Source of the DNA: Lepidodermella squamata
Taxonomy: Eukaryota > Animalia > Gastrotricha
DNA: 64,000 bases
NCBI GenBank assembly: GCA_047495785.1
Contig: JBLDXI010000032.1
Location: 1,240,001 to 1,304,000 of the forward strand
Reading direction: 5' to 3'
Below the pieces are notes generated by a model, which saw only the letters and a program-made list of their open reading frames with translations, searched no databases and had not been told where the DNA came from. Shown in pieces: positions 16,654 to 61,893 of the stretch (position 1 is the stretch's first letter; each line of letters starts with the position of its first letter). The position numbers and the translations under genes are program-made.

Positions 16654-18329
16654 ATGAGTTCAGAAATGCTAGTTCTCCTTCCTTTATTGGTTATCTTCGC
16701 CTCTATTGCAATCGCAATTGCAATTCATTGGATTAGCCGAATCCTGACAGCACCGTCGAACTTACCACCTGGCCCGTTTCCACTTCCAATTATCGGAAAT
16801 GCACACCTGTTCTTCTTTCGTGAAGTTCCAGAAGTTTTGGCTGACTTGAGACGCAAGTATGGAAATGTAGTAACCCTGTATTTCGGCCACAGTTTTCGGA
16901 CAGTGGCTTTTCTTGGGTACCATCCATTATCAGACATATTCACTAGTAAAGAAACTGCTGAAATCGTGGCGGATAGACCCATCTCACACAACGAGATTAG
17001 AGGAGTTCAAACAGGTATCACATGGGCAAGTTGGGCCGAAGCTAAACAAAGACGGAGATTCGTGTTACGGGCTTTCAAAGACAACGGCCTAGGATTGAGT
17101 AAGATGGGTGAACATGTTTTCGAGGAATTGCGAGTTTTCATTGGCCACCTTGAAAGCTCATCTGGTAAGGAGGATGTCGATATTGGCTCGCTGTTGACGA
17201 CTCATCTCGCTAGCTGCGTGCTTCAAACACTCTACAGCCAGAGGTTGGATTTGAGTCAGAAGCGGAGTGCTTTGCTCTACAACTATGGCAAGGTCTTCTT
17301 CGAGTCAACTCTGTTACACCATTTCTTAGCCCCTTACCTCAGTTTGTTTTTACCGGATAAAGTCGCCAGGTAAAGCCGATCCATATTTGAAAAATCCTAA
17401 GTTATGCTCTACAATTTTGATAGAGCGGAGAAGCAAATGGAGTTAGCAATGGAATCATGGCTAAGACCTGAGCTTGAGAAACGGCGAGCATCTTTCGACC
17501 CTTCCACTTGTGTAGATTTCTTGGATGCCTACCTATTGGCTGAAAGGGAAGGAAATGAGATGCCTTTTGAAGCTTTTAGTAGAATTCTTGTCGATCTCTT
17601 CATCGCTGGTAATTGCGAGCCATACTCATTATTGCATCACCTTGAATCATCTTTTCGCTGTGAACTAGGAATGGAAAGCTTAGCAGAAACTACAAATTGG
17701 GCAGTTTACTATTTGGCCCACATGCCCGACGAACAAGAGCGGCTCAGGAAAGAGTTGGATTCTATCGTACCCCTAAGTTGCCAACCTATGCTGGAACATA
17801 GATCAAAGCTCATCCGGCTAGAGGCTTTCTTCAATGAAGTACATCGACACTCGAACAGAATGGAGGTGATTATTACTAAGTAATACTAAGTTGAGTATTT
17901 ATGTCAGTTTTGAAGGTTCTGCTGCTAAGAGCAACTACGAAAGAGCTGAAGATAGACTGTAGCAAAGTCAAAGAAGTCTCACGAACTTGTATCTTACCAG
18001 CTCACACCCCCGTAATGTTTTCACAAGTTCCAAGCAACACCGATCAGGAGTACTGGCTCGATCCTGAACATTTTCGAGTCGACCGATGGCTAGATCCTGT
18101 GGACGGAAGCCTACTGCGTCACGATCACTTCTTGCCGTTTGGTCTTGGAAAGCGCAGCTGCCTCGGCGAGCAGCCGGCACGTGGTTTGATGTTCCTAACC
18201 ATCGCTTCGATGTTGCAAAAATGCACATGGAAGCTAGCAGAACCGAAACTGACTTTGAAAGATTGCACCAGAGCTATTAACCGCAATGCACCACATGGTT
18301 ACAAATTGAAATTCACCTTGCGCTTGTAG
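16654..18329 (+). CDS. Cytochrome P450, CYP2 clan
   Basis: Exons 16654-17369, 17424-17608, 17669-17865, 17916-18329. N-terminal anchor plus PPGPFPLPIIGN, WAEAKQRRRF, DFLDAYL, I-helix DLFIAGMES, EVHR (ExxR), FRVDRW, heme motif FGLGKRSCLG. Confidence 0.93.
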
Positions 18330-18662: not shown

Positions 18663-21564
18663 ATGTTGCTATTATTTCTTTTGGCTGTTACTTTGGCTAC
18701 AGCAGCGGCTGAATCTTCAAACTTGAATTCATCCGTTTACCTCTCGAATTATACGGCAAAAACAACAAGAATAAGGCTTGATGACCCTATGCCGTTAACA
18801 ACAAGCGATTCAGTTGATCCAGCTCAGAAGAATCGAACTATTTTAAGAATTTTGGCGTCACAGACGTTCACAGGCGTTATAGCAGTTGGTCCAATTTCCA
18901 CTGAAGCTCAAGCTGTTGCGTTAGATCATTTGCGATCCATCGAATCATGGCTACCGAAATACCAAGTAGTCTTCGAGAATTTCGACGATCAGGTTTAAAA
19001 CAACACATATTTTCAAGATTGGTTCTATAGCGTTATATTTATTTCAGTGCGATGATGCTGTTGCGGTAAATCAGCTGATGCTGCGAATCAGAGAGAATGA
19101 GCATAGTCAGAATAGATTCCCCCTCGTGCTTCTCAATGAATGCCGCGACGTCAGCCAAGTAATAACTTCTTTCATAATGGAGCCTATAAACTTCCTCGGG
19201 GTAAGCCTTCCCATGGCTAATCTCATGGTTTATTTGAGAATCCTGATTCCTGATTACAGCTTACAAATTATCAATTGGATATGCGACTATTCAGGAAAAG
19301 GGAGAAATTCCCCAACTACTTCACGATTGGAGAACGAGCAGACTACTACTACATAGCATTGGCTAAATTCATTCGCAAAATGGGCTGGTCAAGGGTCGGT
19401 GTAATCTCAGAAATAGATCCATATTGGAACTTGGTAATATTCTATTTTCACTTTTTAAGTCAGTTCAAATTATTTGATCTCCTTCCAGATGGACAGCTTT
19501 ATGCTTGAGCACTTCGATCAGCATAATATCACAGTTGTCTATTTAAGCAAAGTGATGCTCGCGACCACAGATGAGGCAGAAATGGCTTCCGCTTTCGAAG
19601 ACCTTCGTGCTCGCCAACCCCGCATAATCATCGGGAACGTGTTTACTTCGGCAAGTATCGGATGCTGGCTTTATCGATCTGGTTTTTATGGACCAAGTTA
19701 CGTCACATTCATGCTGACCTTCAACAGCTTCAACGAGCATACCGAGGCTCCTGTTGACATGTGGCCCTGGTGCGAAAAGCAAATGCTCCACGCTGTTTTC
19801 AAAAGCATGATCTTGTACTCAGACACTTCGATGGCAGACGTCTACGGACCTGAAGGTGCTAGGGACTCCAATAATTTTTCAACATTAGACGTCCAAAAGT
19901 CACTGCAACTCAAAATCGAAAGGCCTGAGTTGAGCCCAGCCTGGATTTACGGACCATGGCCTTATTACGACAGGGCATATGTCGTAGGAATGATTCTTAA
20001 CATTACCGAAGCGATTTTGAATGAGCGTAACCAGACTTTGTCAGACTGGACTGTCGAAGGGCAAAAGTTCAAAAACAACGGATTTGAGATCGTTGAAACC
20101 CTGAAGCAAGCTATTCTTCGGCTGAAAGTTACTGGGCTGAAAGGGTCCTACGAGTTCGATAAAAAAGCTATGTCTATTGGTACTCAACCAGTTGTCTTTT
20201 TCCAACCAATCTTCACTAGCGATGTTGACGCGATAACTGCTCCTGTCGGATATTACATGTCCACAAAGGCCGACCCCTTGATTTTAAGGAACTCAATCAA
20301 ATGGCGCACGACTAACGGGGTTGTTCCTAGGGACAGATTAGTCATCATGGCAATAGAATTGCCAATGCTCGATAAGGTTGAGGATGTTACCCTGAAAGTA
20401 ATAGCAGCTGTTTCTTTGATGATCACCGTCATTTTTCACTTGCTATCGGTTTGTGCTGCAAGGATCAGTTTCCTTTCCTCCATGGCACGCGAATTCAGTT
20501 TTCATGACATTTTGGAATGCGCAGGGGATTTAATGCTAATTGCCCACATTTTTCTTATCCCGTCGACCTTGGCAGCCTACGCTGCACCCTTCTGCACAGC
20601 CTTTACTTTCTTCGTGATTGTTGGATTCTTTTTGAGTAGTTTAGCCGCAACTAATTTCATGGGCCAGAAGCTATTGGATGAGATGACTGATTCATTCCTT
20701 AAGCAAGAAATCCCTCGGGCCTTCCGGAGAAACGATACGTTCCACACCAATCAAACCTTGCGAACTTTAGATACCATCGAAGTGGTGCCGCGTAATAGGA
20801 AATCAAGATTTGCTAGCAGTTCTTACCAGTCTCGCAGCACCCTGATCAGCACGTATAGCAGCGCTCAATATCGTGCTGTTTCGGCAAATAGATGGTTTCG
20901 ACTAAGTTCTTCACAGACTGCTGTGGTTTTTCACATAACAACTCATGTCATTTTCGCGGCTGCGTTGCTAATCAGCTCTCCAGCATCTGATCAAATCATC
21001 CTTGATAAATTAACGTATTCAGAGCTAGACGAAAGCTTGGCCTATGAATACATGCGACAAGAATGTTCTGTCATCGACTCAGTTTTATTAGGATCTGAAA
21101 GTTCGATTGCATTGACCGTAATTTTAGTGATCTCACAAATCTATTGCATATTGAAAGGATTGATTCACGCGGTTCGAATTCAATCGGTAAGACCTTCTAA
21201 AGAAAGTCTATTTGAAACACATTTTTATCCGGTATACAGGTGTCTCGCACTCAGCCGCTGTCGCAACGGCTAAAACTCACCTCAATCGTAGTCATCAGTC
21301 AATTCACAGTTCTGATAGCAGCGGGATTCATCGGAACCCTAATCCCATCAAAGGGTCGGTATCTGCTTCTACTTCTCTCCTCATCAGTTCTCGTGATGTT
21401 ATGGACAAAATGTTTCCTGATCTACTTACCCGAGGTAATATTATCGTGGGTAGTAAAAGACAAATTGTGGCTAATTCCGAATTTTTCAGATTTATGGGCG
21501 CAAACTTGCCACTAGCGTGGCCGATAAAAAAGGAAGTCGAAAGACTGCTGATGAACTGAACTAA
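18663..21564 (+). CDS. Class C GPCR-like receptor (GABA-B-like: Venus flytrap + 7TM, no Cys-rich domain), tandem copy 1
   Basis: Exons 18663-18992, 19048-19200, 19260-19433, 19489-21186, 21240-21434, 21490-21564. Signal peptide; DDQCDD; KFIRKMGWSRVGVI; RIIIGN..CWLYRSGFYGPSYV; seven hydrophobic segments ending LIYLPE. Confidence 0.85.
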
Positions 21565-22912: not shown

Positions 22913-25886
22913 ATGATCAGCGTTTTAGCTACCGTTTTGATGGTCGTACGTTTCGTATTCAGTCAAGGGATTAATACCACTGATAAATTTGACAATTCGT
23001 CCTCTAAAATAAAGCTTGACAGCCCATTGCCTAACCTGTTGTTCAACATGAAACAACCACTAAGCCGACGGGATAATGTTGAGATAAGAATTCTAGCGAC
23101 AATGTCTTATTCGGGCATTGTTCCGATCGGACCGATCACCTCCATTTCCCACGCTCTCGCCATCGAACGGCTCGAATCGTTGGAAAATTGGCTCCCTGGC
23201 TACAAATTGGTCATTGAGCCCATTGATGATCAAGTAAGAAATTCAGTCTATTGAAATAATTTCTGTTTCTACTTTGTTTGCAGTGTGTCGATTCAGTAGC
23301 AATCGGTACCTTTGTCAATCAAGTGTTGGATGAAGGCGCGGCCAACAGATTTCCACTAGCGATCTTGACAGAATGTAGGGACGTCTCACAAGAAATTACA
23401 GCACTACTGCTCGAACCTAATAACTACTTTGGAGTGAGTTAACTCATTCGTTTTTAATCCAATTCTGATTATTCTTGTCAAAGATTGCCAACTACCAACT
23501 TTATTTGAAGTTTTTCGAAAAGCGAAGCCAGTATTCAAATTTTTACCCTATTGGCGAGCGAGCAGACTACTATTACATTGGATTGGCGAAATTCATCGTG
23601 AAAATGGGATGGTCAAGAGTTGGGGTCATATCAGAAATCGATCCTTACTGGAACTTGGTAAGTTGTTTTACTTTAGGTAGCTTGTGGCCCTGTATTGACA
23701 GTCCCGCGAACTTTTGATGGACAGATGGACCAGTTCCTTTTGGATCACTTTGACGAGCACAATATCTCAGTGGTGTATCTTAGTAAAATAATGGCTGACT
23801 CGCTTGATGAAGCGGTTATTGGGGAAGCCTTCGACAAGTTGAAGCAGAGAGATACAAGGATAATAGTTTCGCAGGGATGGTTAGCTCCAAGTATTGCTTG
23901 TTGGCTGTCAAGGTCTGGCTTGAGCGGGCCTAACTACATAACCTTCACGCTAGCTTGGGCAACGGTCGACGACAAAACTGAACCACCGACTGACATGTGG
24001 CCGTGGTGCACGAAGGAAATGATCGATAAGGTTTATTACAATTTTCTCAACTCATTTCTGTGTTATATTTCTTGTTTTAAAAGGTATATCGGACTGTTTT
24101 TGTGTACTCTGATACAACATTGGGAGACATCTTCGGCAAAGACCTTATGACAGACTTCACCAATTTCACCCAGAACAACGTACATGCTACTTTGAGGGAA
24201 CGAATCGAAGACCCTGAAAAGAACCCGAACTGGTTGTATGGGCCGTGGGGATACTATGACAGAGTCCTAGCTGCTGGGCTCTTGCTCAACGAAACAGAGA
24301 ACTTACTAAGAGGGAAAAATCAAACTTTATCAGACTGGCTTGTTGATACTGATCGATTCAAGACAAGCGGATCTGAGATTATTACTACCATGAAGCAGGC
24401 AGCTCTTCGAATGAAAGGAAGAGGATTGAAAGGTTCTTACCAGTTTGATGGGAAAAAATTGCTGCCCAATGGAACTCAGCCCATTGTTTTCTTCCAGCCA
24501 ACTGCTGTCAAATCCGAATTCGTAAATCTACCCGTTGCATGTTACATGTCATCTCTTAGCGAGCCTTTATTCCTTATTTCGCCCGTTACCTGGCGAACTC
24601 CGAGTGGACAACCTCCAAAGGATGCGACAACAGTGGTTGTAGTTCAACTGCCCATTTTGACCACGGCAGCAAACGCGGCTTTGAAAACCGTTTGCTCACT
24701 GACGCTGATCTTCATCTTTCTATCCGCAATATTGGAATTTCGCGGAAAACGCTTTTCGCCTCGCATTGAACTCAATTTTGGAGCAATAGATTGGGCAGTG
24801 ATAATTGGCGATGTCATAATGCTTGTTCCCATATTTCTTGTTCCTTTCGATATCTCAACGATTCTGAATGGTATCTGCTCTGCAATTATGGTGATGATTT
24901 TCATCGGCTACTCAGTGAGTACTTTTGGTTTGGTTTATGAACTCGAGCTGAGATTCCACGGCCGCCGCCGTGTAAGGAACGCGAATACACCATCTCGTCA
25001 TACAAAAACCACGGAGATGAGGGCAGGATCTTCGCTCAATTACGATGGAGTTTCTCTAGCTGGAACAGTATCAAGCTTGGGTGGCGAATCTCCGATCCTG
25101 GAAGAGAGCGCTTTTCAACGCTTACATGAAGCGCTTGAATTATTAAAAATGTGGATTTTGATGAGATCCAAAGGGACGATAATCGCTGCTTGGGCCATAT
25201 TCCAAGCCGCAATGATCCTGGCCATGGTTGCGATATTTCCTGTAGAGAGTGGCTTCTCTGTGCAAGAAATTTCTTATTCTATCGAAGACGATAGCGTAGC
25301 TTTTCAACGAATGAAGCAAACGTGTTACGTCCTTGAAAGAACTATCTTTCGAAATAGGGACTCGACGATTTTGGCGGGTTTCATTGCATTAACTCAGCTT
25401 GGCCTGATTGCAAGAGGGGTCATCACAGCTGTTCGAATCCAATCGGTAAGTTCTGACTAAATACGTTTCTTGAATTATCGATGCGTCAATCTCTAGAAAC
25501 TGAAAGCAAGATCTGCAGTAGCCAATGCGAATATCGTAGCAGTCGCTAACACTCAGCAGGTAACTTGAAATGAATTTCCTTTACCTATATCGTATTAAGC
25601 GGTACTTCAGAAACCTCAAAGCTTACCGAGCCGATCGAAACTTATTTCCTTAGCAATTGGATGTCAGGTTTCTATAACGATAGCGGCTGCTTTTATTGGA
25701 ATTCTTCGACCGTTCGATGGCGAATATCTACTGATCCTATGCTCATCAGCTGTACTGGTACTAAGCTGGATCAATTTTGGATTCATCATTTTACCCCAAG
25801 TATGTTGCCGCATTAACCTTTAAGACATAGGTATTTATAATCACCTTGAATTTCAGGTTCTATTCGCTTTATTCATTCGCCGCTAA
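22913..25886 (+). CDS. Class C GPCR-like receptor (GABA-B-like), tandem copy 2
   Basis: Exons 22913-23233, 23284-23433, 23484-23657, 23725-24030, 24084-25445, 25497-25559, 25611-25799, 25857-25886. Paralogous to copies 1 and 3 (GERADYYYI, SEIDPYWNL, DMWPWC, YYDR, NQTLSDW, WRT..G.PP.D). Confidence 0.85.
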
Positions 25887-26746: not shown

Positions 26747-29587
26747 ATGTTTCGGAAAATTCTAATTACTCTGCTGGCTCTAAGCGTTGCCGTTTCGCTA
26801 CAGGATAATGAAACCTTGGTTACCGGGAAGCTCAAGTTGGACAGTCCCCTTCCTGAAATCTTAACAGGCTATGACAACAAAACGGACGACAATCGAACAG
26901 AGATTCGTATTATCGTGACAATGTCCTACTCTGGCTTGGTGCCAATCGGAGCTGTAGTCTCAGAAGCCCTTCAAGCGGCCCTGGAGCGCCTACGATCGAC
27001 AGGAAATTGGCTGCCAAACTATCGCGTAGTGGTCGAAACAATCGATGATCAATGCGACGATGCAATAGCCATAAACGAACTGGTTGACCGACTTCGAGAT
27101 AACGAAGCTGTGCCGAATCGCTTTCCGATTACTCTGCTCACGGAGTGTCGAGATGTTTCGCAACAGATTACTTCTATGGTGATACAACCGTTCAACTTCA
27201 TTGGGGTAATATCATCACGTTTAGATGGGTGTTACATTACTCTTCGCTTTTTTTAGATTTCCAACTACCAGCTTTACCTGCGATATTTCGAGAATCCGGA
27301 AAAATATCCGAATTTTTACCCGATTGGAGAGAGGGCTGACTACTACTACATCGCTCTGGCGAAATTTATACGTAAATTAGGCTGGACTAGGGTTGGAGTT
27401 GTCTCGGAATACGATCCCTATTGGAATCTCGTAAGCCCTATACTCAATTTCTCATCTAACTAAATAAATCCTTTCAATTTTAAGATGGATGATTTCATGT
27501 TCGACCACTTCGACAATCATAACATCACAATCGTCTACCTGAGTAAAATCATGTCAGGATCGACCGACGAAGATGAAATGGCCTCTGCAATGGAAGACTT
27601 GAAAACAAGAGACGTTCGAATTATTGTTTCACAAGCTTGGATTTCAGCTACCGTCGCCTGCTGGCTCTATAAATCTGGGTTGACAGGGCCCAACTACGTC
27701 ATCATCATGATAGGATGGGCTACGATCGACAACACCGTTCAGCCACCTAAAGATACTTGGCCGTGGTGCACTATGGAAATGCTGAGAGAAGTAAGCTAGC
27801 TAAATCAAGCCAACCCTGTTAAGCATTAAGTCTTTAAATAGGTGTCTAAAAGCATCTTCACCTACTCAGACACAACAATGGGGGATATCTTGGGGTACAA
27901 TGAAGCTAGGGACTCGACAAATTTCCCGCCAAGTGGTCTCATCCAGGCTATGAATGATCGAATTGATCATCCTGAAATGAGCCCAGGCTGGCTGTACGCA
28001 CCCTGGTGTTACTACGACCGCGTTCTTGCTATGGGGCTCCTCCTTAATGAAACTGAAACACTTCTCAACGCTCGAAACCAAACTCTATCAGACTGGACTG
28101 TAGGGACGGACAATTTCGCTGAGAATGGAAGTCAAATCGTTAGTATAATGCAATCAGCTATGCTGAGAATGAAAGGGATTGGGATGAAAGGCGATTTTCA
28201 GTTTGATGCTCATACCTCACTTCCAAACGGTACACAACCCATTCTGTTTTTCGAGAGTATCTACGAGGGCGATGAACTTAAAATGCTGCCAGCAGCTTAC
28301 TTCATGTCATCTCGAAAGGACCCGCTGGTTTTAATGAACACTCTGAAATGGAGAACATTCAGCGGCGAACCTCCGAAAGATTCTTTGACTGTGATTCAAG
28401 TAAATGCACCATTGTTAACAACGGCAGAAGATGCAACCTTGAAATCAGCTGCATCGATAACTTTGCTCATAATAGTCCTCTCACCTGTTTTGAACTCCCT
28501 GCCATATCTCTCTTCTCTGAATTCTCATTCTGCCATGGATGTTTCTGATAACTCGATCCTAATCGGCAGCTCTTCAATGCTGCTTTTGATTTTCCTATCT
28601 CCATCTAATCTAACATCTTCACTGGCGATACACTGCTCTTGCATGGCTATTTTCGCGTTCGCTGGGTACATTTTGAGCAGCTTCTCCTTACTTGTGAGTA
28701 CAGAGCGGCGTTTCAAGGATGAAATCAGCATTCAGCTGATAATGTTTCAATCATCAACCTCCCTCAGCCTGTTCAAGGCCCGGCAAAGTTTAGCGCCAAC
28801 TCTCAGCCGACCAAGCATTGCAGCTATCCCGCGTCCTAGAAAAGTCTCAAACTACGTGGTCATTCGAGTCTCGGAGACTTTCATCGACAAAATAGCGGAG
28901 TGGCTCGATAGAAAGTCCACCTTGAGTGTTATCTACACATGGTCCGCGCTTCTAGCCGGGTTGGGCATAGCAATCCTAATCATCTCTCCGATTGAGACAC
29001 AGGTGGTCACTCTCGGCTATGATATATCGAAGCTAGATGATAGCTTGGCCTTTGAAAGAAAACGGTTAGAATGCTCTGTTGTTGAAGCATCCTTATTTGG
29101 CAGTCAGGTTACAACCGTCCTAACTTGTTTAATTGCTGTCTCTCAAATCATGGTCCTGTTACGCGGAGTCTTCATGGCTAGCAAGGTCCTTTCGGTGAGT
29201 TCATTCTAAAATATGGAAGAGACAACAACTTCACATTTTGTATTTCAGAAATCAAAGAATAGCATTATTTCTGGAGGATTGAAGCGGGCCTCAGTCGCGA
29301 TAATAAGCCAATTTTCACTCACAGTTGCGGCTGTTTTCATCGGAGTCTTGAACCCTTCAAATAGCGAGTATCTTCTCATCCTTTCCTCGGCCATTATTCT
29401 CGCGTTAACATGGATCAATCTCGGCTTGATTATCCTGCCTAAAGTCGGGGCAATATTTCGTAAAGAACAGCTTATCAGCGATCGAGCATCTCTGGAACGA
29501 AAAAGCAGCGCCGGATTGAGGATCGAAAGACGGCCGTCAGCTGTTCAAATTCCTTCAAGGAACAGTTTCCTACATCCCAACAACTAG
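26747..29587 (+). CDS. Class C GPCR-like receptor (GABA-B-like), tandem copy 3
   Basis: Exons 26747-27205, 27257-27430, 27485-27790, 27842-29194, 29249-29587. Same motifs as copies 1 and 2; TM7 ends IILPK, followed by a Ser/Arg-rich tail. Confidence 0.85.
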
Positions 29588-29945: not shown

Positions 29946-31500
<1,555 letters not shown>

Positions 31501-47231: not shown

Positions 47232-50123
47232 ATGATTATTTTAATAATTATTTCCGTCGTCCTATCAACTGGTCTCGGACAGGAGGCTGAAGTCGTTTCG
47301 TTACAGCCTATAACAGCGTTACATTCAATCGTTGCTCGGCAGTCAGTTTACGAGGCGAATGTTAACGGCAAATTGGCGGCGACATGCGAAGTTTGCGAGG
47401 CCCCTCAGACAAATGTTAGCGTCTATTGGGGCCGAGACGATGCGATTTCCGGCGTTCCAGCCTTCGTTATTGGCGGCAAAATCAAGTACCCGAGATGGAC
47501 TTCAGTCCCGGCTCAAGTCCTGCCTGGCGTTAGTTGCGGACCGCCCGGATCAAACGGCGTTAGATGTGAGTTATTAAAAAAAAACCGTATTTCCAAATAA
47601 TAAAACATCGAAAAATCGAATTTTCACAAAATTTTTCACGTAATTAGAGACATATACCATTAAAATCACCATTAATTACTGATTAATTTGAAATATATGT
47701 TAAAAAACTTTTTAAAATTTCGAAATTTAATGATTGCGCATTTTTTAGACGTTGTGAGCCTGCTGGCTGATAGCCTCGCAGTTGCGGATAGCGGCCGATG
47801 GTGGTGCCAATTATTACCCAACGACAAATCAGCCGATTGGCGGTTCGCATATTTCACAATTAACGTCTACGGGGCTCTTGCGCCGAGCGCCGATGTGTCA
47901 CTCAAGGCCAACGACAGCGCCCTTGTTGCCACCAACACGCCGGCGATAACTGTCATCGAGGGCTCGACGACGAAACTCGAGTGCGACATAAACGCGGCCA
48001 AGTTGAACAAACACCAGAATGCGAGTGTTACGTGGCAGATCGAGGGTGCTTCAAGCCCATTAGCCGAGGACCTGCCAGCCTTCGACTACGTCGCGGCCGT
48101 TGAACATTTCGGCAAGCAGTTACTCTGCATTATCGACTATTTAACTGCTCAAGGCAAAGCGCCGTCTATTGTCAGAAAAATTCAGCTAAACATCATTCGT
48201 ATGTTACGATTATTTCCAATTTTTTCAGTTGATTTTCGATTTTTTTTTAGTAAAACCTCGAACTTCGATTTCGGCATGGGGACCAGCGGGCATGAGTGTT
48301 TCAACGCTGGACGGCGAACATGCGACATCAAGCTCAACGACCGGCCCTACCCGGTCTGTTCTAGTCGATGAAGGTCAATCGATTGAACTTCACTGCTCAG
48401 CCTTCAATTCATTGCTACACAACTCGAGAGGTTTAACTGGAAAGGAGACGTACAAATGGTTTTCGATCGGACCTTCGAGTGATCCAGGGTCTCAGGCCAA
48501 GGAATTGCTACAAGGCGTCGGAAAACGGGTGATCACCCTGGGGCCCATGGATCGGACTCGAGACGGTGAAATCATAAGATGTGACGTCGATAATGGCTAT
48601 TTCGCAACTAGCGCCCATCTCCAATTTAGCATTCAATGTAAGTTTTCCAAAAATTCAAATTTGAAAATTAATTTGAAATTTAAAATTCTCAAAAATAATT
48701 TCTTTTTAAAATTTTAATGAATTCTGACTTAATGAGATTTATTACATTTTTGTTAAATTTTATCAAGTTTTTTTAAATTACATTTTTTAAATTTATTCAA
48801 TTCAAATTTTTTGAAAATTAATTTCAAAATTTTTAAATTATATTCAAATCTAATTTCTTTTAAAATTTTGATCTTTTTTTAATTTTAATGAATTTGGAAT
48901 TTTTGAGATTTTAAAATTTTTTTATTATAGATAAATTGGCGAATAATGCGGAGCCGGAATTTATTGGCGCCTCACTGGGTGATGTAGTCACCCTGGACTG
49001 CACCTCGGGTGACCCTGAAGCTGAGCGTTTCGTTAGCTCTTACCAATTCACATGGTTCTTCGGCCGGCTTCAAATCGTTCTACCATCTGACGGCGATAAA
49101 TCTCAACCGAAAAATCTGCTCGCCTTCCGTTTAGCCAATTCGACCCAGTTCGGAAATTACCGATGCCTAGCGCGGAATACCCGAAATAACCAACAAGCCG
49201 CTCGTAATTACTTCGTGTTAGAACGCGCGAAACCTCAAGCGTCAAGTTCAGTTCAAATGGTCGACGCTGTCCTCCGCTACTCGGCCGCTATTCGATGCTC
49301 AACCTTCGGATTGCCCCGGCCGAATTTATTCAAATGGTACCGAGACAACGCGACGGAGCCTGGCAATGAACTACTCGAAAATCCGTCGAAATTCGAGGTG
49401 CGACAAGTCAACGCAAGTTCAGCAATCACCGAGTCGATTTTAACGATTAAATACGTTACGGAGGCCGATATAGGCCGTTACATTTGCGTGGCTAGCAACG
49501 ACTACGGCCGCGTTGAATCCGCCTATCTACTCACGAGAAAGGAATCGGTCATGTTCGTCGAAATTGTCGCTGGAGCTTGCGCTGGCGCGTTTATCCTTCT
49601 GATTCTGATCGCTGTCATCCTATTCTTTAAATGCCGCCGCGTTAAGGCGGCTGAATCCGGCGCGAATTCTCTGAAATTAAGCGAAACAGCGTCGAGTGGG
49701 TCCGGGTCTTCGACGGCGAGCGACCGGCGCCGCGATTCGATAACTTCGCCTACGACCTATGAAGATAGCAGCAAATCATCGCCCGGGGTCGCGACAGTCA
49801 CGCAACAGACGCAAAATTACGCGTTGACCCTGCCGTCGCTGCCGAAATTAATGCCATCGTACCACCGCTATTCGGACTCGTTGGCCGACGCCGGTTCCGT
49901 GGTGGTACCGGCGCCGGGCGCCAACGGCCTGGTTCGCCTGTCGACGTCGGCTAATGACAATTTCGACGACTGGCTGAAGCAGAGCCGGCTGGCTACTTTC
50001 AGCCACCTTGGCGCCTACCAGCCGGCTGTTTCTTTCAGACACCCTCTACCGCCCATCCCGGCGGCGGCGAGTAGCAGCAGTCAGGTCGGCGCGGAACAGA
50101 GCCGGCTAGCTACCGATGTTTAG
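47232..50123 (+). CDS. Kirre/NEPH (KIRREL/SYG-1)-like type I membrane protein with five Ig domains
   Basis: Exons 47232-47565, 47749-48198, 48251-48637, 48931-50123. Signal peptide; five Ig domains (DSGRWWC, GKQLLC, DGEIIRC, FGNYRC, DIGRYIC); TM segment IVAGACAGAFILLILIAVILFF; C-terminal PDZ-binding LATDV, comparable to the THV ending of Kirre/NEPH proteins. Confidence 0.75.
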
Positions 50124-51466: not shown

Positions 51467-52636
51467 TTATTCGCTCACGATTTGCCTCGCGCCCTTTTTC
51501 CGCAGATATTCCACAACTTCTTTGCTCTCCCCAGATGCGATTGCAACTTGCAAAACTGATTCTCCCTTGGAGTTGACCGCATTCACATCAGCCCCAGCTT
51601 CCTCAACTAGGTACTTCACAATGTCCAAGTAGCCAGCAGCCGGAAATAAGACACTATCCTGTTTCACGATCTTCCCATTCACATCAGCTCCCTTCTGAAC
51701 CAAATACTTGACAACATCGAGACGCGCATTGAGAGCTGCCACTCCGATAGGACGTGCCCCTTCAATGTTAGCAGCGTCGATGCTAGCACCATTTTCAACA
51801 AGAATCTTGACTACATCTAAATAGCCATAAGCTGCCGCAGAATATAGAGGTGTTTTCCCGTAATCTGTCCTCGCATTGACGTCAGCTTTCACTTTAATCA
51901 AGTACTCCAGAACATCAACATGCCTCCTTTCCACAGCACTGAAAATCGCCGTTGTTCCTCCCCATTCTCTTCCAGATAGATTGGCACCTCGTTCAACCAA
52001 CAATCTTACGATGTTCACAAGTCCTGCTTGAACAGCGATTATCAATGGAGTTCGTTCCAGGAAGGTCTCTCGAGCTTCAATAGACGCTCCTCTGTCCAGG
52101 AGAAGTTTAGTGATCTCCTCGCGATCCGCTGGTTTCTCAATGCATTGAACTGCCCTGTGTAGCAGGGTGCCATTTTGAACCCTAACAATGAATATGCTGT
52201 TAACAGAGCTGCACGTCTTCCACTGGTCCTCGCCGAGTTTCCGCCAGTCGGGATTGAACTTGCCGCCGGTTACCTTATCGATCTTAGCTATGATCGATTT
52301 CGCAGTTGACGCATCCAAGTTCTCGTAATAAAGATTCTCGAAAAGGGACAAGTAGAGGGAATCAACTTCGTCGCCCTGGTTACTCTGCAAAACGGTAACT
52401 TGCTATTATTTCAGGTAAAATGATTTGTTGAGAAAGTTTTCCCGCAATCTCAATGACTCAAACATATTAGAATAAACGCATACTGGGCTTGAAGCATCAG
52501 CTTTTTCCTGAGGTTGATCCTGTGCTGTAGAAGACAAGGTTGGATTCGAAAGCCTTGTTCCACTTTTGAAGCATGCGATAGCCAAGCCAGAGAAGGCTAG
52601 CAGCACCATCCACGTGGGCATCAAATAATTCCTCAT
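51467..52636 (-). CDS. Ankyrin-repeat protein with an N-terminal signal peptide
   Basis: Exon 1 (52636-52484: MRNYLMPTWMVLLAFSGLAIA-CFK...) splices in phase 0 to exon 2 (52384-51467), which holds ~7 ankyrin repeats (GTLLHRAV, RTPLIIAV, TTAIFSAV, GKTPLYSAA, ARPIGVAA, SVLFPAA, GESVLQVAI). Confidence 0.85.
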
Positions 52637-53219
52637 TATCAGGATTTTTTAACATTTCTAAAATATGTAACCGAGTTCTGTGGTCTTGTCCATTTATTTA
52701 ATGCTGCGTAGATTGCGCAGTTGAAAATTACCATTACTTCCTGCTTTTAATCATTGCATTGAGTGCTCGACTCAAGGGTTAGGGGATTCACATTTTATAC
52801 CGTGGCCGAAATGCGTTGCAAAAATGGACTAATGAATGGAAGGTGATATGTGAAGCTATTTATTTTCAGCCTGGAACCAGCTTTCACCATTCTTTAGGGG
52901 GATGAAGAGTTTAGGTGCGAGGATTACGCAATGTTTTCTTCTCCCTTGAGAGAAAATATGGGTAGCCATGCCATATACGGCAAAAAGGTCGCTATAATAA
53001 TAATATATTTTGCGCAAATGTTGTGAAAAAAGCATTCGATTCAGCATTCGATTATATCGGCTATGGATGCGGCGCAACATACCGCCAACATGATTTTTCC
53101 CCTCAATTTGTCGAGAAATTCGACTTTTTATTTATATCACAGCAATTTTGAATGCATCAAAAATAGTTATCTCATAATCAATGGTTATCGGGGTAACGCT
53201 GCATTGGGCATTTAGGGGA

Positions 53220-56200
53220 TCACAGTACGATGGAGTTCACGAAGTAGAGGTTTAGCGCAAGAACGAATTCGAATGCCACCATACCAGCAAAAATGTCAAG
53301 TAGATTGACGAGGGATGATGAAAATCCGCGGACTAATTTGGTAGGCGTCTCATACTTGGCCTGGTTTTTCGCAACGAGACGAGACATTATGATCTGATAG
53401 AATGCGATGAAAGCAATCGTTCCCGTCAGGCCGAGGATATAACTTGCATACCGAATCTCCTGGTTCGTTGAAGGAATACTCGAGAGAACGTCCGACTGAG
53501 CAACGATAAGCGACAGCATGATGGTACAGGAAATTCCAGGTCGATCAGGAAGTGCAGGATCCATAAAGAAAGTTGCAAAGGCGAGGATTATCAATACATA
53601 ACAAGGGACTACCATATTCACGATGTAGTAGCCGGGGCTACGCTTGAATATGAACTTAACCTTGGCAAAGGATACTTGATCAGACGGTCTAATAGGACTG
53701 GTGACGTTTCCCTTCACAACCTTCATCGAATCGAAAGCCCAAACTCCGTAGGCTAGGTCTCCTTTTGCAACTACATTGAATCCACCGATTCTAATGAAAT
53801 AAGCAGATTCAGACATCAACAACGTCATCTCGCAAGTTTGCGTGTCGAATGGGAACTTGGACAGGTCAAATGCGCAACTTGCTGGAAAAATGCCAACCCT
53901 GTTCCAGTGGAAAAACAGCGTGCGGTTCGGCGCAGTTGGGTAGTAGGCAATATCCATCGACTCAGCGCAAGCCGGGTTGTTGAGGTCGAATTCCGGTGTC
54001 TTGTTAGCAAAAGCCAATGAAGGTCGCCAGAAGTCGGTCCTTCGAGTGGAAACCAGGCGCTCCCTGTCATCAGCCTTGGGAGCCGTGTAAGCTGCCTCGC
54101 ACGAGCTGACCATCCACTGCAGGAGCAGACCGCCCCACAGCGAAACCTCCTGCTCAGCTTGATCAACAGACGTCAACCTCTCAACAGTTAGTGTTCCGTA
54201 GATTTTCGTATTCGGGTCAGGCGCACGCCAGTCTGCGGCGATGCTTTTGCATGTGAGCAGATCATCGACGTCGACTGTTGGAATGTAATTGCCCCTTTCT
54301 AGCTCTGGTATAGGAAATTCGCTGTCGGACAAATCAAACGTGGGGGGTGATGGTATTGAGCTGGTCGTGGTGGATACCGTGGTTGTGGTTGGTGAACAGT
54401 CATACACGGCCAGGCTGAACAAATCAACTGTATCAGACGTTAAGCCATTTCGAGCCCCTATTCCCAACATCATAGTTTGAGTAGCCATCAAGCTGTTTAG
54501 AGAAACGGGCAATGTTCCCTTGAAAGGTCCGAAACATGTTCCATCGTCTAGACAAGCCGAAATCTATAATTGCAGAAAAATGAAGTTCAATGATTTGGTG
54601 GCAAATATTCCTACCGATAGCGATTTGCCGTTTTCCAACCGAATCTGGTATGTAACCAGATTGTTTCGAGCTGTTAGGAAGTTCAAAGCTGTGCAGATCG
54701 CAGTGGCTGTCTCGTTACAGCTCCAAGGAAACAAAGTGCCGCCCCGAGGACTAGTTGTGACACTTGAGCTCAAAGTCATCGTTAAACCATTAACTGCTAT
54801 TGCAAAGCCTATGAACTTGCTCGAATCTAAACCGAAACCATTATCTAAAAGCGATGTATAAGCACTAGTTAGTTACTGTTACGCAGCAAAGTAAATTAAT
54901 AGACTAATGTGGTAAAAATCGATAAAAATAAAAAATGAGCCTACGCTTAGTTGATGGGCGACCAATCGATTCGTTGTTCGCTAAGATGAGGGCGAATCCT
55001 TCCGACAGAGAATTGTCTACGTCTGATATACGTACCGACATCTCAATGTAAAAGTTGCTAATGCTAAATGGCTGTAGAGAGCAAAATAATCGATAGTATA
55101 TTTAAATGACGGTTGAAAAACTCACGATTTTACTCCACAAGCCGGTTTCGACATTTGTGGTGCCTTCTGACAGCAGCCGAGTCGTGTTTGCCGACAGCCC
55201 AACCGATGTCATACCACTGTGCGGGTAGTAGTCCCAATTGCCTGCTAAATCCTTCGCGTGGTTGATTAGAGACAATTGCGGCTGCAAGGTTCCGCATGGC
55301 TGAACCCTTGAAATGACACCCGTAAATGATTCAAAGCGCTAAAGCGCTAAAATACAAACCTGTTAGGCGAGAATTCTTTCGAGCAGTCGTAAACTGCAAC
55401 GCTCAAGATATCAATGGTATCAGTAATGCCACCATTGTAACCACCAATGCCCAGCATCATCTGCTGCCCTGCCCATGTAGATAGTAAGCTGTAGTTATTC
55501 GAGGCTCCCGTAAACGGGCCAATACATGATCCGTTAGACAGACAAGAGCCGAGCGAAATTTTGAAGCCGGCTTCGACTCGCAGCTGGAAAGTGACCGGCT
55601 TGTCGAGCATCCAAACCGAGACGTTAATCTTCGAATGACAAGCCACAATGTCGGCTGAATCGCACGTACTGTGCGATCTACCGCCTACGGGTGAAACGTT
55701 ACTGATCCAACCGGAGTAAGACGATGTCCATGGACTGACAAATGCTGCTAATCCGGTGGCTGAATTCCAGTCCACGCCGAAATCCATATCTCGATGAATG
55801 AAAAATGTATAAAATGTGTTCGGAGGATGATTCATAATCGCGCTTACTTGCGTTGAACCTTGTCAGTGAAGCATTCTTTGTGATAATAATTGCCAACCCA
55901 TCACCTCCTCGCGGGTCACCCGGGCTGTTGATATACTGGACTTCCATGTAAAAATTGCTGAGCGTGAACGGCTGGAAAGACATCGGATAGGAAAATTGCA
56001 GTAATAAATGACGACTGCGCTTACATTTTTCGCCCAAAGACCGGAGCTTTGCCAAGTCGATTGATCATTCAAAGCTATACGCGTCGTGTTTGCAGGGGAA
56101 TTTCCCGCGTTCAGGCCAGGCGCTTGGTAAAGGTCCCAGTAGGCGGCGCGGCCTGCTGAGTGGTCGAACAGCGAGTATTGCGGAATCAGGGTTCCACATC

Positions 56201-56279
56201 GGGCTACTCCTTGCCCGCCAACCGAGCGGTGCTGTGTTGCCAGTAAGCCAACCACCCCTAAAGCTAATAAAGCAAACAT
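53220..56279 (-). CDS. Cys-loop pentameric ligand-gated ion channel subunit carrying two tandem N-terminal L-type (legume/ERGIC-53/VIP36-like) lectin domains
   Basis: Exons 56279-56025, 55971-55848, 55789-55360, 55306-55126, 55071-54945, 54844-54615, 54563-53220 join in frame. Order: signal peptide, two homologous lectin-like repeats, Thr/Ser/Pro linker, then the ligand-binding domain (FWRPSL, Cys-loop CAFDLSKFPFDTQTC) and M1-M4 (KRSPGYYIVNMVVPC, PDRPGISCTIMLSL). Confidence 0.8.
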
Positions 56280-59344: not shown

Positions 59345-61893
59345 ATGAGGTGTTTGTTGAAAAATACCCTTAATTTGTTGTTGCTTACTGTCTTTTTCCT
59401 ATCAGCTGATCTCAGTCAAATTGAGGATGACTACGATGCATTCTTCGCGAAATATTCAGTTTCACCCAAAGTCGACGATTTACTTCAGTTTGAGCCAGCT
59501 GTTCGCCTCGACAAACCTCGAGCAATTCAAATCGTTAGCAAAGCAGCACCAAGAAAGCTCAAAACTTTTAGCCGACCTAAAGCAATCTACAACAGGCGAC
59601 ACATTGCTACACCTCGCCGCTCGTCACGGTTCCACGGCTATAGCTAAATTTTTGATCGACCAATCCATCTAGCTTGTTTGTTCGGTCAAGTCGATTTTGT
59701 TAAATGGATTTTGGAACACCCAAATGTCACGGAGGCTGAAACAAATAACAAACAAACGCCCTTATTCTACGCTGCCAGATCTGACTCAATAAACGCGAAT
59801 CGAATCGTCGATATTCTGATGGAAAATGCAGCGAATCTATTTCACGTCGATAAAAATGGTGACATACCCCTCACAATAGCCGCGAATTCCGAAAATAAGA
59901 ACAACAGCGATTTGTTAACAGTGCTGAGTGGGTCAAACTCGGCGAGTGTGAGAGCTGTAAAGAAAGGCGCTATCACAACATCTCACATTATCGCTGAGCG
60001 GAATCGGATTAACTTCTTAGAAAGCCCACGTGGATTGCTCGTATTTGACATAAAGGCCCAAGACGAAAACGGCGACACCCCACTATGCTATGCTGTTCGA
60101 AATGGGCATAACAAGCTTGTGGCAAAATTTGTAGCTAAATTTCAACTTGAGAAACTTCGCTGCAGTTACTTGACGGTGAATCGAGGCCGGCTGGATCAGT
60201 CGATAGGTTCGGGGCTTTTGCTTCACTTGGTGGCTTACCTTCGCAGAACTATGTTCCTGCGTTACTTCAACGACTTCAAAGTCAGAGATTCACGAGGTCG
60301 TAACGTTCTTCACGCTATGGCATTGATGTCTGATGAAGATTTAACCAAGCCAATGAAGACCCTGTCTAGCTTACTTGTTAGGCAATTTCTCGCTGGCTCG
60401 AAGTCTCTTCTTGAAGAGAAGAACAATCAGGGCAGAACGCCTCTGCTGGTGGCGATTTACAACAAGGCTGATCACTTAGCCAACATTCTAGCCGATCAGT
60501 ATCGCGCCAACATTTCTGCTGTGGACAACGCCGGTTATTCAGCTCTTCATCTAGCCCAGACCAGGGCATCGTATGAAAAATGGCTGCCTCATTTCAGGAT
60601 TGTTTCAAAGCCATCTGGCATGACTCCTTTCCTCGTAGGAGTTCAAGAAAAGAAACCAGTTGAATTTTTACTGTTTCTCGGCGGCAGTGGTGCTCATACG
60701 TTAGACGTGAATATTTACAATCAATCTGCGGCGCATCTTGCAGCCAAGTCGAATTATACCGAGTTTTTCGTTGAATTCAATGGCCTGATCGACTTGCATG
60801 GGTGCGACAACAACGGCGAAACAGCTTTACTGATTGCAATCTCCTCTGGGTATTCGGAAATTGCGAGCTTGCTCCTTGCCGTTGATCAAACGCTTCTCTT
60901 CGATATCGTCGATTGCAAAAATGGCGATAAACCAATTCATGCTGCTGTTCGATACTCGAGGCTCGATCTGATAAAACAAATTCTAGCAAATTCCGAGGTA
61001 CGCTCCAAGCTTGATGAGCCAAATGATAACGGCGAGAGTGCCCTGTCAATAGCGATCGATTCGGAAAATCTAGAAGCTGTTCGACTGCTTTCTGACGCCA
61101 ACCCTGCAGTTAAAAATGTTACAGCTGATGGCAGTATCAGATTACGCGGAGGCAAATCTGGAGCGTTCGGCATTGTTGAGTTAACGCTGAACGGAAATTG
61201 GGGAAGACTATGCAGGGATAACTTTGGTTTGCCTGAGGCCCAAGTCGTGTGCCGGCAGCTCGGCTACAAGTAAGCTCTTTTTTACGTATTTTCTAGTTTA
61301 TTGCAAAGTATACGTGAACTTTTTATCCAAACAGCCCGTTGTCGGCCGTTATTGTCAATGGCTATGGCGGAATGTCTTCGGACGAAGACTTTAGTTTTCG
61401 CATTGGCGGTTACGACTGTGCTGGAAATGAGAATAAATGGGTCGAATGCCGATCAACAGGCCGGGTCATTCAAAACTGCAACAACGCTGAAAACGTGATA
61501 ATTGCCTGTGGCGATCAGCCGTATGAAGGAAAAGTTCGATTGACCGGCAAAAACTCAAGAAGTAACGGCGTTTTGGAGATATATCACAACAACACTTGGG
61601 GGCTGGTTTGTGATGACCATTTCGATGATATCGCCGCAAAAGTGGTATGCCGACAACTGGGCTTGGAGTAATTTTTCGCATTTGTCAACTCACTGATTTA
61701 CTATAACTTTTTTCCTTCCAGTTCAACAGATGCTCGTGTTTATCAAGGCAATACCGGTGGCAGTGTAACCCACGTGTGGCTGGACAATGTTAATTGTATT
61801 GGGCCAGAGGCTTCATTAGCAGCGTGTGGATCTGCAGGCTGGGGCGTTCACAATTGCGATATCGACGAGGCAGTAAAAGTAGCGTGCGACTAG
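59345..61893 (+). pseudogene. Signal peptide + long ankyrin array + two SRCR domains, with two apparent frameshifts (pseudogene or assembly error)
   Basis: Starts MRCLLKNTLNLLLLTVFFLSADLSQ. Frame changes near 59512 (AVRLD / NLEQFK) and near 59660 (AKFLIDQ / PIHLACLFGQ). More than 10 ankyrin repeats run to ~61100. SRCR1 is IRLRGG..GIVE..WGRLCRDNF..AQVVCRQLG; SRCR2 is VRLTG..GVLEIYHNNTWGLVCDDHF..WLDNVNC..WGVHNC. Later exons 61335-61667 and 61722-61893. Confidence 0.75.

What the first reader, a model, noticed from the sequence alone, without database searches (positions are those of the whole stretch)
53220..56279. Pentameric ion channel fused to two L-type lectin domains: candidate glycan-sensing or glycan-anchored channel
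Seen: scattered minus-strand ORFs splice into one ~895-aa frame through introns of 51-100 nt. The order is signal peptide, two ~220-aa homologous repeats, a Thr/Ser/Pro stalk, and a complete Cys-loop channel. Each repeat carries CGTL.PQ.SL, NTTR..L....W/V..GLW.K, PF..SNFY.E, GGDGLAIII / SEGFALIL, DFGVD..ATGLAAFV / GFGLD..FIGFAIAV, and MMLGIGG.NG..DT.DI.S.AVYDC. Known: these motifs line up with the ERGIC-53/VIP36/legume lectin fold (GDG.A.W, FG..d.f.Gl.if, FG.sA.TG.l.DnHDi.s), and animal Cys-loop subunits normally carry no large extra N-terminal domain. The channel lacks the vicinal loop-C cysteines, so it is not a nicotinic alpha subunit. It has an acidic residue just before M2 (PDR), which suggests cation selectivity, and a very short M3-M4 loop. 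Inference: a pentamer would display ten lectin-like heads and could couple glycan recognition (microbes, algae, prey, mucus) to depolarisation, or use them for tethering. Repeat 1 keeps the sugar-binding Asp (GDG) and repeat 2 has Glu; the DxY/FxN Ca-binding motif appears lost in both. I do not know of this architecture being described.
Basis: partly seen in the sequence, partly recalled or inferred. Interest (0 to 1): 0.88.

Follow-up and report, generated by a model that had tools for sequence, protein, structure and literature searches.

The report
Animal Cys-loop channel with extra N-terminal domains
One intact gene of an unidentified invertebrate encodes a complete Cys-loop (pentameric) ion-channel subunit preceded by two large, related, cysteine-rich extracellular domains with no detectable relatives; that layout has so far been described only in bacteria, and I could not confirm that the extra domains are lectins.

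Summary
On the minus strand, seven exons (56279-53220) join through six GT-AG introns of 51-100 nt into one 896-codon frame. [quoted passage not shown]

The fusion does not depend on splice prediction. The last ~55 residues of repeat 2, the linker and the whole channel lie in one uninterrupted exon.

The channel part is a true but divergent Cys-loop receptor:
- Pfam Neur_chan_LBD, 6e-8
- nicotinic and glycine receptors in the PDB, ~1e-12
- AlphaFold model pLDDT 76, Foldseek TM ~0.7 to GlyR/GABA-A/GluCl

The L-type lectin assignment is not established. No exon piece hits Pfam or PDB sequences or profiles. The largest piece has no relative among 1.84 billion proteins, and it folds at pLDDT 31. 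The full spliced repeat could not be given to the profile or fold tools.

Closest known architecture: the bacterial DeCLIC, a pLGIC with two N-terminal beta lobes. I rate this a new variant of a known kind. Glycan sensing remains speculation.

The parts
53220..56279 (-). Whole coding region: 7 exons, 896 codons plus stop. Exons are 56279-56025, 55971-55848, 55789-55360, 55306-55126, 55071-54945, 54844-54615 and 54563-53220.
   Evidence: in-frame splice model with six GT-AG introns; exon GC 49.2% against intron GC 34.1%.
56214..56279 (-). Predicted signal peptide (aa 1-~22, a hydrophobic core followed by small residues). An in-frame ATG 27 codons upstream, at 56360, is an alternative start.
   Evidence: Read from the translation. 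No signal-peptide predictor was available.
55377..56204 (-). Repeat 1 of the N-terminal module (aa 26-264; exons 1-3 with introns 56024-55972 and 55847-55790). It has six Cys and six NxS/T sequons.
   Evidence: homology to repeat 2; Cys and sequon positions.
54390..55302 (-). Repeat 2 of the N-terminal module (aa 272-507; exons 4-6 and the first ~58 codons of exon 7). It has six Cys at the positions of repeat 1.
   Evidence: (54% identity of its exon-7 part to the end of repeat 1).
54276..54395 (-). Thr/Ser/Pro-rich linker (aa ~506-545), probably an O-glycosylated flexible stalk. It lies in the same exon as the end of repeat 2 and the channel.
   Evidence: sequence; the stretch of the linker included in the channel model (aa ~537-545), with the start of the extracellular domain, has pLDDT <50 (model residues 1-26).
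53637..54275 (-). pLGIC extracellular (ligand-binding) domain, aa ~546-758. The Cys-loop C679-x13-C693 lies at 53832-53876.
   Evidence: Neur_chan_LBD 6.3e-8, 32.7 bits against a cut-off of 26. Also; the invariant family columns P151, D153 and Q155 are retained.
53226..53636 (-). Transmembrane domain: M1 53565-53636, M2 53484-53543 (pore: -2'P, -1'D, 0'R, 9'L), M3 53355-53453, M4 53226-53339. The M3-M4 connection is only a few residues.
   Evidence: AF2 helices 223-246, 254-273, 284-316 and 322-359 of the 360-aa model; alignment to nAChR M1-M3; hydropathy; the 9' Leu is invariant.
53127..53132 (-). AATAAA, a candidate polyadenylation signal 88 nt after the stop codon.

Best explanation
Shown:
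- This is a single intact gene of a bilaterian animal. Its neighbours are choline acetyltransferase, homeobox, Ig, SRCR and ankyrin genes.
- It encodes a divergent Cys-loop receptor subunit whose extracellular domain is preceded, in the same polypeptide, by a ~480-aa module of two tandemly duplicated domains.
- Each domain has six cysteines at matching positions. The 12 NxS/T sequons all lie in the extracellular part. A ~40-aa Thr/Ser/Pro linker follows the module.
- The channel core keeps the family's gating hardware: the Cys-loop FPFD, the pre-M1 Arg, the 9' Leu and the M2-M3 Pro. It also has four transmembrane helices.

Inferred:
- The subunit pentamerises into a working ion channel.
- The channel is probably cation-permeable, because of Asp at -1'. 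A Pro at -2', as in anion channels, makes this uncertain.
- Its agonist is not a classical transmitter. The loop-B Trp and the loop-C aromatic and Cys residues of nicotinic receptors have no counterpart in the alignment.
- The ten N-terminal domains of a pentamer would stand above the channel on flexible, probably O-glycosylated stalks.
- They most likely act as a built-in extracellular binding module that tethers or clusters the channel on a matrix, glycocalyx or partner-cell ligand, or captures a ligand. A rigid gating lever is less likely.

Their fold is unresolved. It is probably all-beta and possibly concanavalin-A-like.
For: - Gene model and repeats.
- The fusion is independent of splicing. 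The frame is open from 54563 to 53220 and contains the end of repeat 2 (54% identical to the end of repeat 1), the linker and the channel. There is no signal peptide between repeat 2 and the channel domain.
- Channel identity: Pfam LBD above its gathering score. About 250 PDB pLGIC sequences match at E<=1, the best at 1.4e-12. The AF2 model has pLDDT 76.2 and pTM 0.71, with ten strands and four long helices. Foldseek gives ~1e-18 and TM 0.65-0.74 to GlyR, RDL, GluCl and GABA-A. The invariant or near-invariant family columns are retained.
- Extracellular topology of the module: an N-terminal hydrophobic leader, 9 of the 12 NxS/T sequons, and paired cysteines.
- Precedent for accessory N-terminal lobes that modulate a pLGIC: DeCLIC (PMC12664993, PMC9897478).
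Against: - There is no transcript, protein or functional evidence.
- No orthologue or paralogue of the module was found anywhere, so conservation cannot be shown. The source genome itself is absent from the protein libraries.
- Pfam Neur_chan_memb is below threshold (11.9 against 28.1 bits).
- The fold of the module is unknown.
- The tethering role rests only on the flexible linker and on analogy.
- Ion selectivity is ambiguous.
Confidence: 0.6

Rival explanations
1. The two repeats are L-type (legume/ERGIC-53-like) lectin domains that bind glycans, and glycan binding gates or anchors the channel.
For: - The order of the motifs resembles ERGIC-53/VIP36 as I recall those sequences: a GDG-type strand, then an FG...GL.aF strand, then a G.G..NGG..D..DI.S strand. 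This is memory, not a test.
- The domain size (~235 aa) and the predicted beta content of the exon-3 piece fit a concanavalin-A-like sandwich. The model has seven strands but is low-confidence.
- The first and last Cys of each repeat could clamp adjacent termini, as such a sandwich would allow.
Against: - No Pfam lectin hit on any exon piece.
- No lectin among PDB hits for the exon-3 piece alone or for four two-row profiles covering exons 1-3 of repeat 1 and their repeat-2 counterparts.
In ERGIC-53, Asp121 and Asn156 are each required for mannose binding (PMC3912170).
- The long flexible stalk makes direct gating by the heads mechanically implausible.
Confidence: 0.2
2. A DeCLIC-like allosteric module. 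The two lobes pack on the extracellular domain and on neighbouring subunits and tune gating kinetics or ion (for example Ca2+) sensitivity, rather than tethering.
For: The layout is the same: two homologous N-terminal lobes making up about half the subunit mass (PMC12664993). The DeCLIC NTD accelerates gating and binds Ca2+ (PMC12664993, PMC9897478).
Against: - There is no sequence similarity to DeCLIC, which is in the PDB set searched.
- The lobes are ~235 aa with three probable disulfides, whereas each DeCLIC lobe is an eight-stranded jelly roll (PMC12664993).
- A ~40-aa low-complexity linker separates the module from the channel, unlike DeCLIC.
Confidence: 0.15
3. Annotation artefact or dead gene. 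Either the lectin-like exons and the channel exon belong to separate transcripts, or the locus is an unexpressed, decaying lineage-specific gene.
For: There are no expression data. No homologue was found in any library. The channel is very divergent (~20-27% identity to anything).
Against: - Repeat 2's C-terminal third is in the same open exon as the channel.
- The 2.7-kb frame is intact across six introns with consensus splice sites.
- All family-invariant gating residues are kept.
- There is a clear exon/intron GC contrast and a nearby AATAAA.
- A channel-only product would lack a signal peptide.
Confidence: 0.05

Closest known systems
DeCLIC (Desulfofustis-related deltaproteobacterial pLGIC) and other prokaryotic pLGICs with N-terminal domains (Tasneem et al. 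2005, PMC549065; PMC12664993; PMC9897478)
   Same: A pentameric ligand-gated channel subunit whose extracellular domain is preceded in cis by two mutually homologous, beta-rich lobes that make up about half the protein. The intracellular M3-M4 domain is very short.
   Different: - This gene is an animal gene with introns and a true Cys-loop (C-x13-C, FPFD).
- Its lobes are ~235 aa with six conserved Cys and many N-glycosylation sequons. Each DeCLIC lobe is an eight-stranded jelly roll.
- There is no detectable sequence similarity.
- A ~40-aa Thr/Ser/Pro stalk separates the lobes from the channel.
Animal Cys-loop receptors (nAChR, GlyR, GABA-A, GluCl, RDL; Pfam PF02931/PF02932)
   Same: The extracellular-domain fold, the Cys-loop with FPFD, the pre-M1 Arg, M1-M4, the 9' Leu and the M2-M3 Pro. 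The best PDB sequence and fold matches are all in this group.
   Different: - A ~540-aa N-terminal extension (leader, two repeats and stalk).
- No loop-C Cys pair, and no alignable loop-B Trp or loop-C aromatics.
- A P-D-R motif before M2, a hybrid of the anionic P-A-R and the cationic acidic -1'.
- Almost no intracellular domain.
- Only ~17-27% identity to anything found.
- The transmembrane Pfam model scores below threshold.
L-type lectins (ERGIC-53/LMAN1, VIP36, legume lectins; Pfam PF03388/PF00139)
   Same: Similar domain length, predicted beta-rich content, and a motif order that resembles the family as recalled from memory. Extracellular or luminal location.
   Different: No statistically supported match in any test run here. 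The residues that bind sugar and Ca2+ in ERGIC-53 (Asn156 and the 155-161 and 176-185 loops, PMC3912170) have no evident counterpart. There are six conserved cysteines per domain.
N-terminal (amino-terminal) domains of ionotropic glutamate receptors, and trans-acting extracellular scaffolds of nicotinic receptors (my own knowledge)
   Same: The concept is the same: an extra extracellular module on top of a ligand-gated channel that serves assembly, clustering or modulation.
   Different: Unrelated folds and channel families. Here the module is in cis on a pentameric channel.

Membership tests
Pentameric ligand-gated ion channels / Cys-loop receptors | Significant match to the ligand-binding-domain profile (Pfam PF02931) above its gathering score | tested here: met
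   E=6.3e-8, 32.7 bits against a cut-off of 26; about 250 PDB pLGIC sequences at E<=1, best 1.4e-12.
Pentameric ligand-gated ion channels / Cys-loop receptors | Cys-loop: two Cys 13 residues apart enclosing the F/Y-P-F/Y-D motif | tested here: met
   C679 and C693 with FPFD between them. P151, D153 and Q155 are invariant across the 40-sequence alignment.
Pentameric ligand-gated ion channels / Cys-loop receptors | Four transmembrane helices after the extracellular domain, with 9' Leu in M2, and an overall fold like solved pLGICs | tested here: met
   four helices, pLDDT 76. Foldseek TM 0.65-0.74, E~1e-18, to GlyR, GABA-A, GluCl and nAChR. L263 is invariant.
Pentameric ligand-gated ion channels / Cys-loop receptors | Match to the transmembrane-region profile (Pfam PF02932) above its gathering score | tested here: not met
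   11.9 bits against a cut-off of 28.1 (E=0.28), covering M1-M2 only. PDB alignments nevertheless run through M1-M3, and the fold is predicted.
Pentameric ligand-gated ion channels / Cys-loop receptors | Pentameric assembly, ligand-gated ion conduction | not testable with these tools
   Needs expression and electrophysiology, or a structure.
L-type lectins (Lectin_leg-like PF03388 / Lectin_legB PF00139) | Significant profile match to the family | tested here: inconclusive
   There were no hits for any of the six N-terminal exon pieces at E<=10, or for the piece and profile searches against PDB. However, each domain is split into pieces of 41-142 aa, and the spliced domain could not be submitted.
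L-type lectins (Lectin_leg-like PF03388 / Lectin_legB PF00139) | Legume-lectin beta-sandwich fold | tested here: inconclusive
   AF2 of the 142-aa exon-3 piece gave pLDDT 30.9. Foldseek on it found nothing at E<=0.001.
L-type lectins (Lectin_leg-like PF03388 / Lectin_legB PF00139) | Sugar-binding Asp and Asn plus the Ca2+-binding loops (ERGIC-53 Asp121, Asn156, loops 155-161 and 176-185; PMC3912170) | tested here: inconclusive
No reliable alignment to a lectin could be made.
DeCLIC-type multidomain pLGICs | Accessory domain N-terminal to the extracellular domain in the same polypeptide, built of two homologous lobes | tested here: met
DeCLIC-type multidomain pLGICs | Homology of the lobes to the DeCLIC NTD1/NTD2 jelly rolls | tested here: not met
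   No DeCLIC chain appeared among the PDB sequence or profile hits. The comparison at the level of fold could not be made.

The most novel reading that the evidence does not exclude
This would be the first animal Cys-loop receptor with built-in extracellular recognition heads. A pentamer would display ten lectin-like domains whose binding to an extracellular macromolecule (a glycan or a matrix or partner-cell protein) directly controls the opening or the placement of the channel. That would be a macromolecule-sensing pLGIC that evolved independently of the bacterial multidomain channels.
Probability: 0.12. Interest if true: 0.85.

Novelty: new variant of a known kind. Interest (0 to 1): 0.62.

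Why it matters
Accessory N-terminal domains on pentameric channels are known only from prokaryotes, and only one of them, DeCLIC, has been studied structurally (PMC12664993, PMC9897478). The broad survey of the family set the terminal regions aside and called for work on domain architectures (PMC4795631).

If this gene is expressed, animal Cys-loop receptors can also carry large extracellular modules. It would provide:
- a eukaryotic system for asking how such modules tether, cluster or modulate a pentameric channel;
- a new orphan domain family of ~235 aa with six Cys, to place structurally;
- a divergent channel core with almost no intracellular domain, which suits structural work.

Tried and rejected
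- **Close homologues of the channel exon.** The search for homologous proteins found none at E<=0.001 in the 246-782-aa range. The tool's word filter, not a real absence, probably explains this.
- **Relatives of the exon-3 piece of repeat 1.** A full HMMER scan of 1.84 billion representatives gave 0 hits, not even the protein itself. The source proteome is therefore not in the library.
- **Paralogues in the window.** tblastn found none.
- **Metagenome scan.** It found only L001, a distant AT-rich contig with two plain Cys-loop genes and no extra domain.
- **Bacterial/archaeal genomes and viral contigs.** Scans with repeat profiles found nothing.
- **Structure of the module.** AF2 of the exon-3 piece was unusable, and the Foldseek hits on it are meaningless.
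- **A PDB chain id as input to protein comparison.** Not accepted. No lectin sequence could be obtained for an HMM-HMM test.
- **The repeats as degenerate copies of the channel's own extracellular domain.** Rejected. hhalign of the repeat profile against the extracellular-domain profile gave P=0.5-0.8.
- **Two separate genes.** Rejected because exon 7 is continuous.
- I did not scan or fold the full spliced repeat or the 896-aa protein.
Full report
**What is there**

The minus strand between 56279 and 53220 carries seven open segments. Joined at GT...AG boundaries, they give one frame of 896 codons.

Exons are 49.2% GC, introns 34.1% and flanks about 39%. An AATAAA lies 88 nt after the stop.

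The window is from a bilaterian animal. It also carries a large exon of choline O-acetyltransferase, a homeobox gene, Ig-domain genes, and ankyrin and SRCR genes. The best named choline acetyltransferase matches are spiralians at 45-49% identity (bivalves, Lingula, cestodes, rotifers). One unnamed metagenome protein is 65% identical. I could not name the species, and its proteome is evidently not in the protein libraries.

**Anatomy of the product**

- aa 1-~22: a hydrophobic leader. An in-frame ATG 27 codons upstream is an alternative start.
- aa 26-264: repeat 1.
- aa 272-507: repeat 2.
- aa ~506-545: a Thr/Ser/Pro-rich linker.
- aa ~546-758: the extracellular domain of a pentameric ligand-gated channel.
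- aa ~759-895: four transmembrane helices.

The repeats are clearly homologous. They are 37% identical over 230 residues at E=1e-40, and 39% over 235 aligned columns. Each has six cysteines at equivalent positions: first, C-x7-C, C-x5-C, last. The first two introns of each repeat interrupt the same aligned position in the same phase. This points to tandem duplication of a multi-exon unit, and it independently supports the splice model.

All twelve NxS/T sequons lie in the predicted extracellular part, nine of them in the repeats.

**Is the fusion real?**

This does not rest on splice prediction. Exon 7 is open from 54563 to 53220. It holds the last ~55 residues of repeat 2, which are 54% identical to the end of repeat 1. 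It also holds the linker and the entire channel.

There is no stop, no ATG with a leader and no signal peptide between repeat 2 and the channel domain. A channel-only product would therefore not be targeted correctly. At the DNA level I consider the fusion established. Expression remains untested.

**The channel**

- Exon 7 matches Pfam Neur_chan_LBD above its gathering score (6.3e-8).
- It matches about 250 solved pLGIC sequences at E<=1. The best are nicotinic beta and alpha chains at ~1e-12 and GlyR alpha2 at ~6e-11.
- A profile made with two distant metagenome relatives (L001) pulled in 40 pLGICs. With these as an alignment, AlphaFold gave pLDDT 76.2 and pTM 0.71, with ten strands followed by four long helices.
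- Foldseek places the model on GlyR, RDL, GluCl, GABA-A and nAChR chains at E~1e-18 and TM 0.65-0.74.
- The columns that are invariant or nearly so across the alignment are all retained: the Cys-loop Pro, Asp and Gln, the 9' Leu, the pre-M1 Arg and the M2-M3 Pro.

Aligned to nicotinic alpha1, the pore reads -2' Pro, -1' Asp, 0' Arg, 2' Gly, 6' Thr, 9' Leu, 13' Val, 16' Ser, 17' Asp and 20' Ser. The M2 numbering itself is established knowledge.

The loop-B Trp falls in a deletion, and the loop-C Tyr, Cys-Cys and Tyr have no counterpart. A classical acetylcholine-type pocket is therefore unlikely.

The M3-M4 connection is a handful of residues. The Pfam transmembrane model is below threshold. 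No sequence found is more than ~27% identical. This is a deep orphan within the family.

**The N-terminal repeats**

- None of the six N-terminal exon pieces hits any Pfam family at E<=10.
- The 142-aa exon-3 piece has no relative at E<=0.001 among 1.84 billion representative proteins, and none in the PDB.
- Two-row profiles of the four homologous piece pairs against the PDB gave only isolated chance hits: SgcJ at 0.49, a beta-galactosidase at 0.075 and an uncharacterised protein at 0.46. None is a lectin.
- Scans of bacterial/archaeal genomes and of viral contigs found nothing.
- AlphaFold on the exon-3 piece gave pLDDT 30.9. Foldseek on that model gave nothing.
- The repeats are not degenerate copies of the channel's own extracellular domain (hhalign P=0.5-0.8).

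These negatives are limited in force. Introns cut each ~235-aa domain into pieces, and profile methods lose most of their power on pieces.

From my own recollection of ERGIC-53 and VIP36, the motif order in the repeats does look L-type-lectin-like. I give the concanavalin-A-like fold roughly even odds. That is a lead, not a result.

Even if the fold is right, the chemistry is doubtful. In ERGIC-53, mannose binding needs Asp121 and Asn156 and two Ca2+ loops (PMC3912170).

**How it most likely works**

*Shown:* one polypeptide carries a leader, two disulfide-rich glycosylation-prone domains, a low-complexity stalk and a complete channel core.

*Inferred:*
- Five subunits form a channel crowned by ten heads on flexible, probably O-glycosylated stalks.
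- A 40-residue Thr/Ser/Pro stalk is a poor lever. I therefore favour a tethering, clustering or ligand-capturing role for the heads over direct allosteric gating.
- The channel would be opened by an unknown non-classical stimulus at the extracellular domain.

The main rival for the heads is a DeCLIC-like role. In DeCLIC, two N-terminal jelly-roll lobes pack on the channel, bind Ca2+ and speed up gating (PMC12664993, PMC9897478).

**Comparison with what is known**

Multidomain pLGICs are described for prokaryotes (PMC549065), and DeCLIC is the only one with a structure. The pan-kingdom survey discarded terminal regions and noted that such associations were known only at the genome level (PMC4795631).

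My literature searches found no animal Cys-loop receptor with a large N-terminal module. This is absence of evidence in an open-access corpus, not proof.

I therefore classify the finding as a new variant of a known kind. It is a genuine Cys-loop receptor (membership tests met, apart from the weak transmembrane Pfam score) in a DeCLIC-like layout, built from an unrelated orphan domain.

**Verdict**

| Question | Verdict |
|---|---|
| Observation | Confirmed |
| Architecture claim | Supported at the DNA level |
| Lectin identity | Unresolved |
| Glycan sensing | Speculative |

Interest is 0.62. The architecture is unusual and experimentally tractable. It rests on one unexpressed-as-yet gene model in one unidentified genome, with no relatives to show conservation.

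Noticed in passing
window 14308-15816 (+): A 502-codon open exon encodes most of a choline O-acetyltransferase (Pfam Carn_acyltransf, 1.9e-138). It is 65% identical to an unnamed protein on two ENA metagenome contigs (L002, L003) and 45-49% identical to spiralian ChATs. This is the best clue to the source organism, an unsampled bilaterian lineage. I did not check whether a vesicular acetylcholine transporter gene is nested upstream, as in other cholinergic loci.
   Followed up: partly
window 19474-21273, 24102-25460, 27842-29209 (+): Three tandem paralogous long ORFs are 30-39% identical to each other (E down to 1e-98). They have no significant Pfam match, only a faint ANF_receptor hit (E=0.063) on the first. 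They may be a divergent family of receptors with a periplasmic-binding-protein-like domain.
   Followed up: partly
window 16654-17373 (+); 30469-31434 (-); 47688-50123 (+); 51467-52390 (-); 59678-61273 (+): Other neighbours, in order: a cytochrome P450 exon, a single-exon homeodomain protein, Ig-domain exons, an ankyrin-repeat gene directly downstream of the channel gene, and an ankyrin-plus-SRCR gene upstream.
   Followed up: no
L001 (MDTB01092078.1) 121-1464 and 1888-3081: An AT-rich metagenome contig carries two tandem intronless Cys-loop receptor genes (447 and 397 aa, with a true Cys-loop and FPFD/FPYD). A small Asn-rich ORF lies between them on the opposite strand. The contig is probably from a protist or a giant virus. 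About 20 related metagenome proteins exist (P0121-P0140).
   Followed up: partly
proteins P0154, P0155, P0158-P0160: In a group of ~483-aa pLGIC relatives from marine and other metagenomes, the Cys-loop region lies near residue 260 instead of ~135. That implies an N-terminal extension of about 125 aa. Its origin (prokaryote or protist) is unknown.
   Followed up: no
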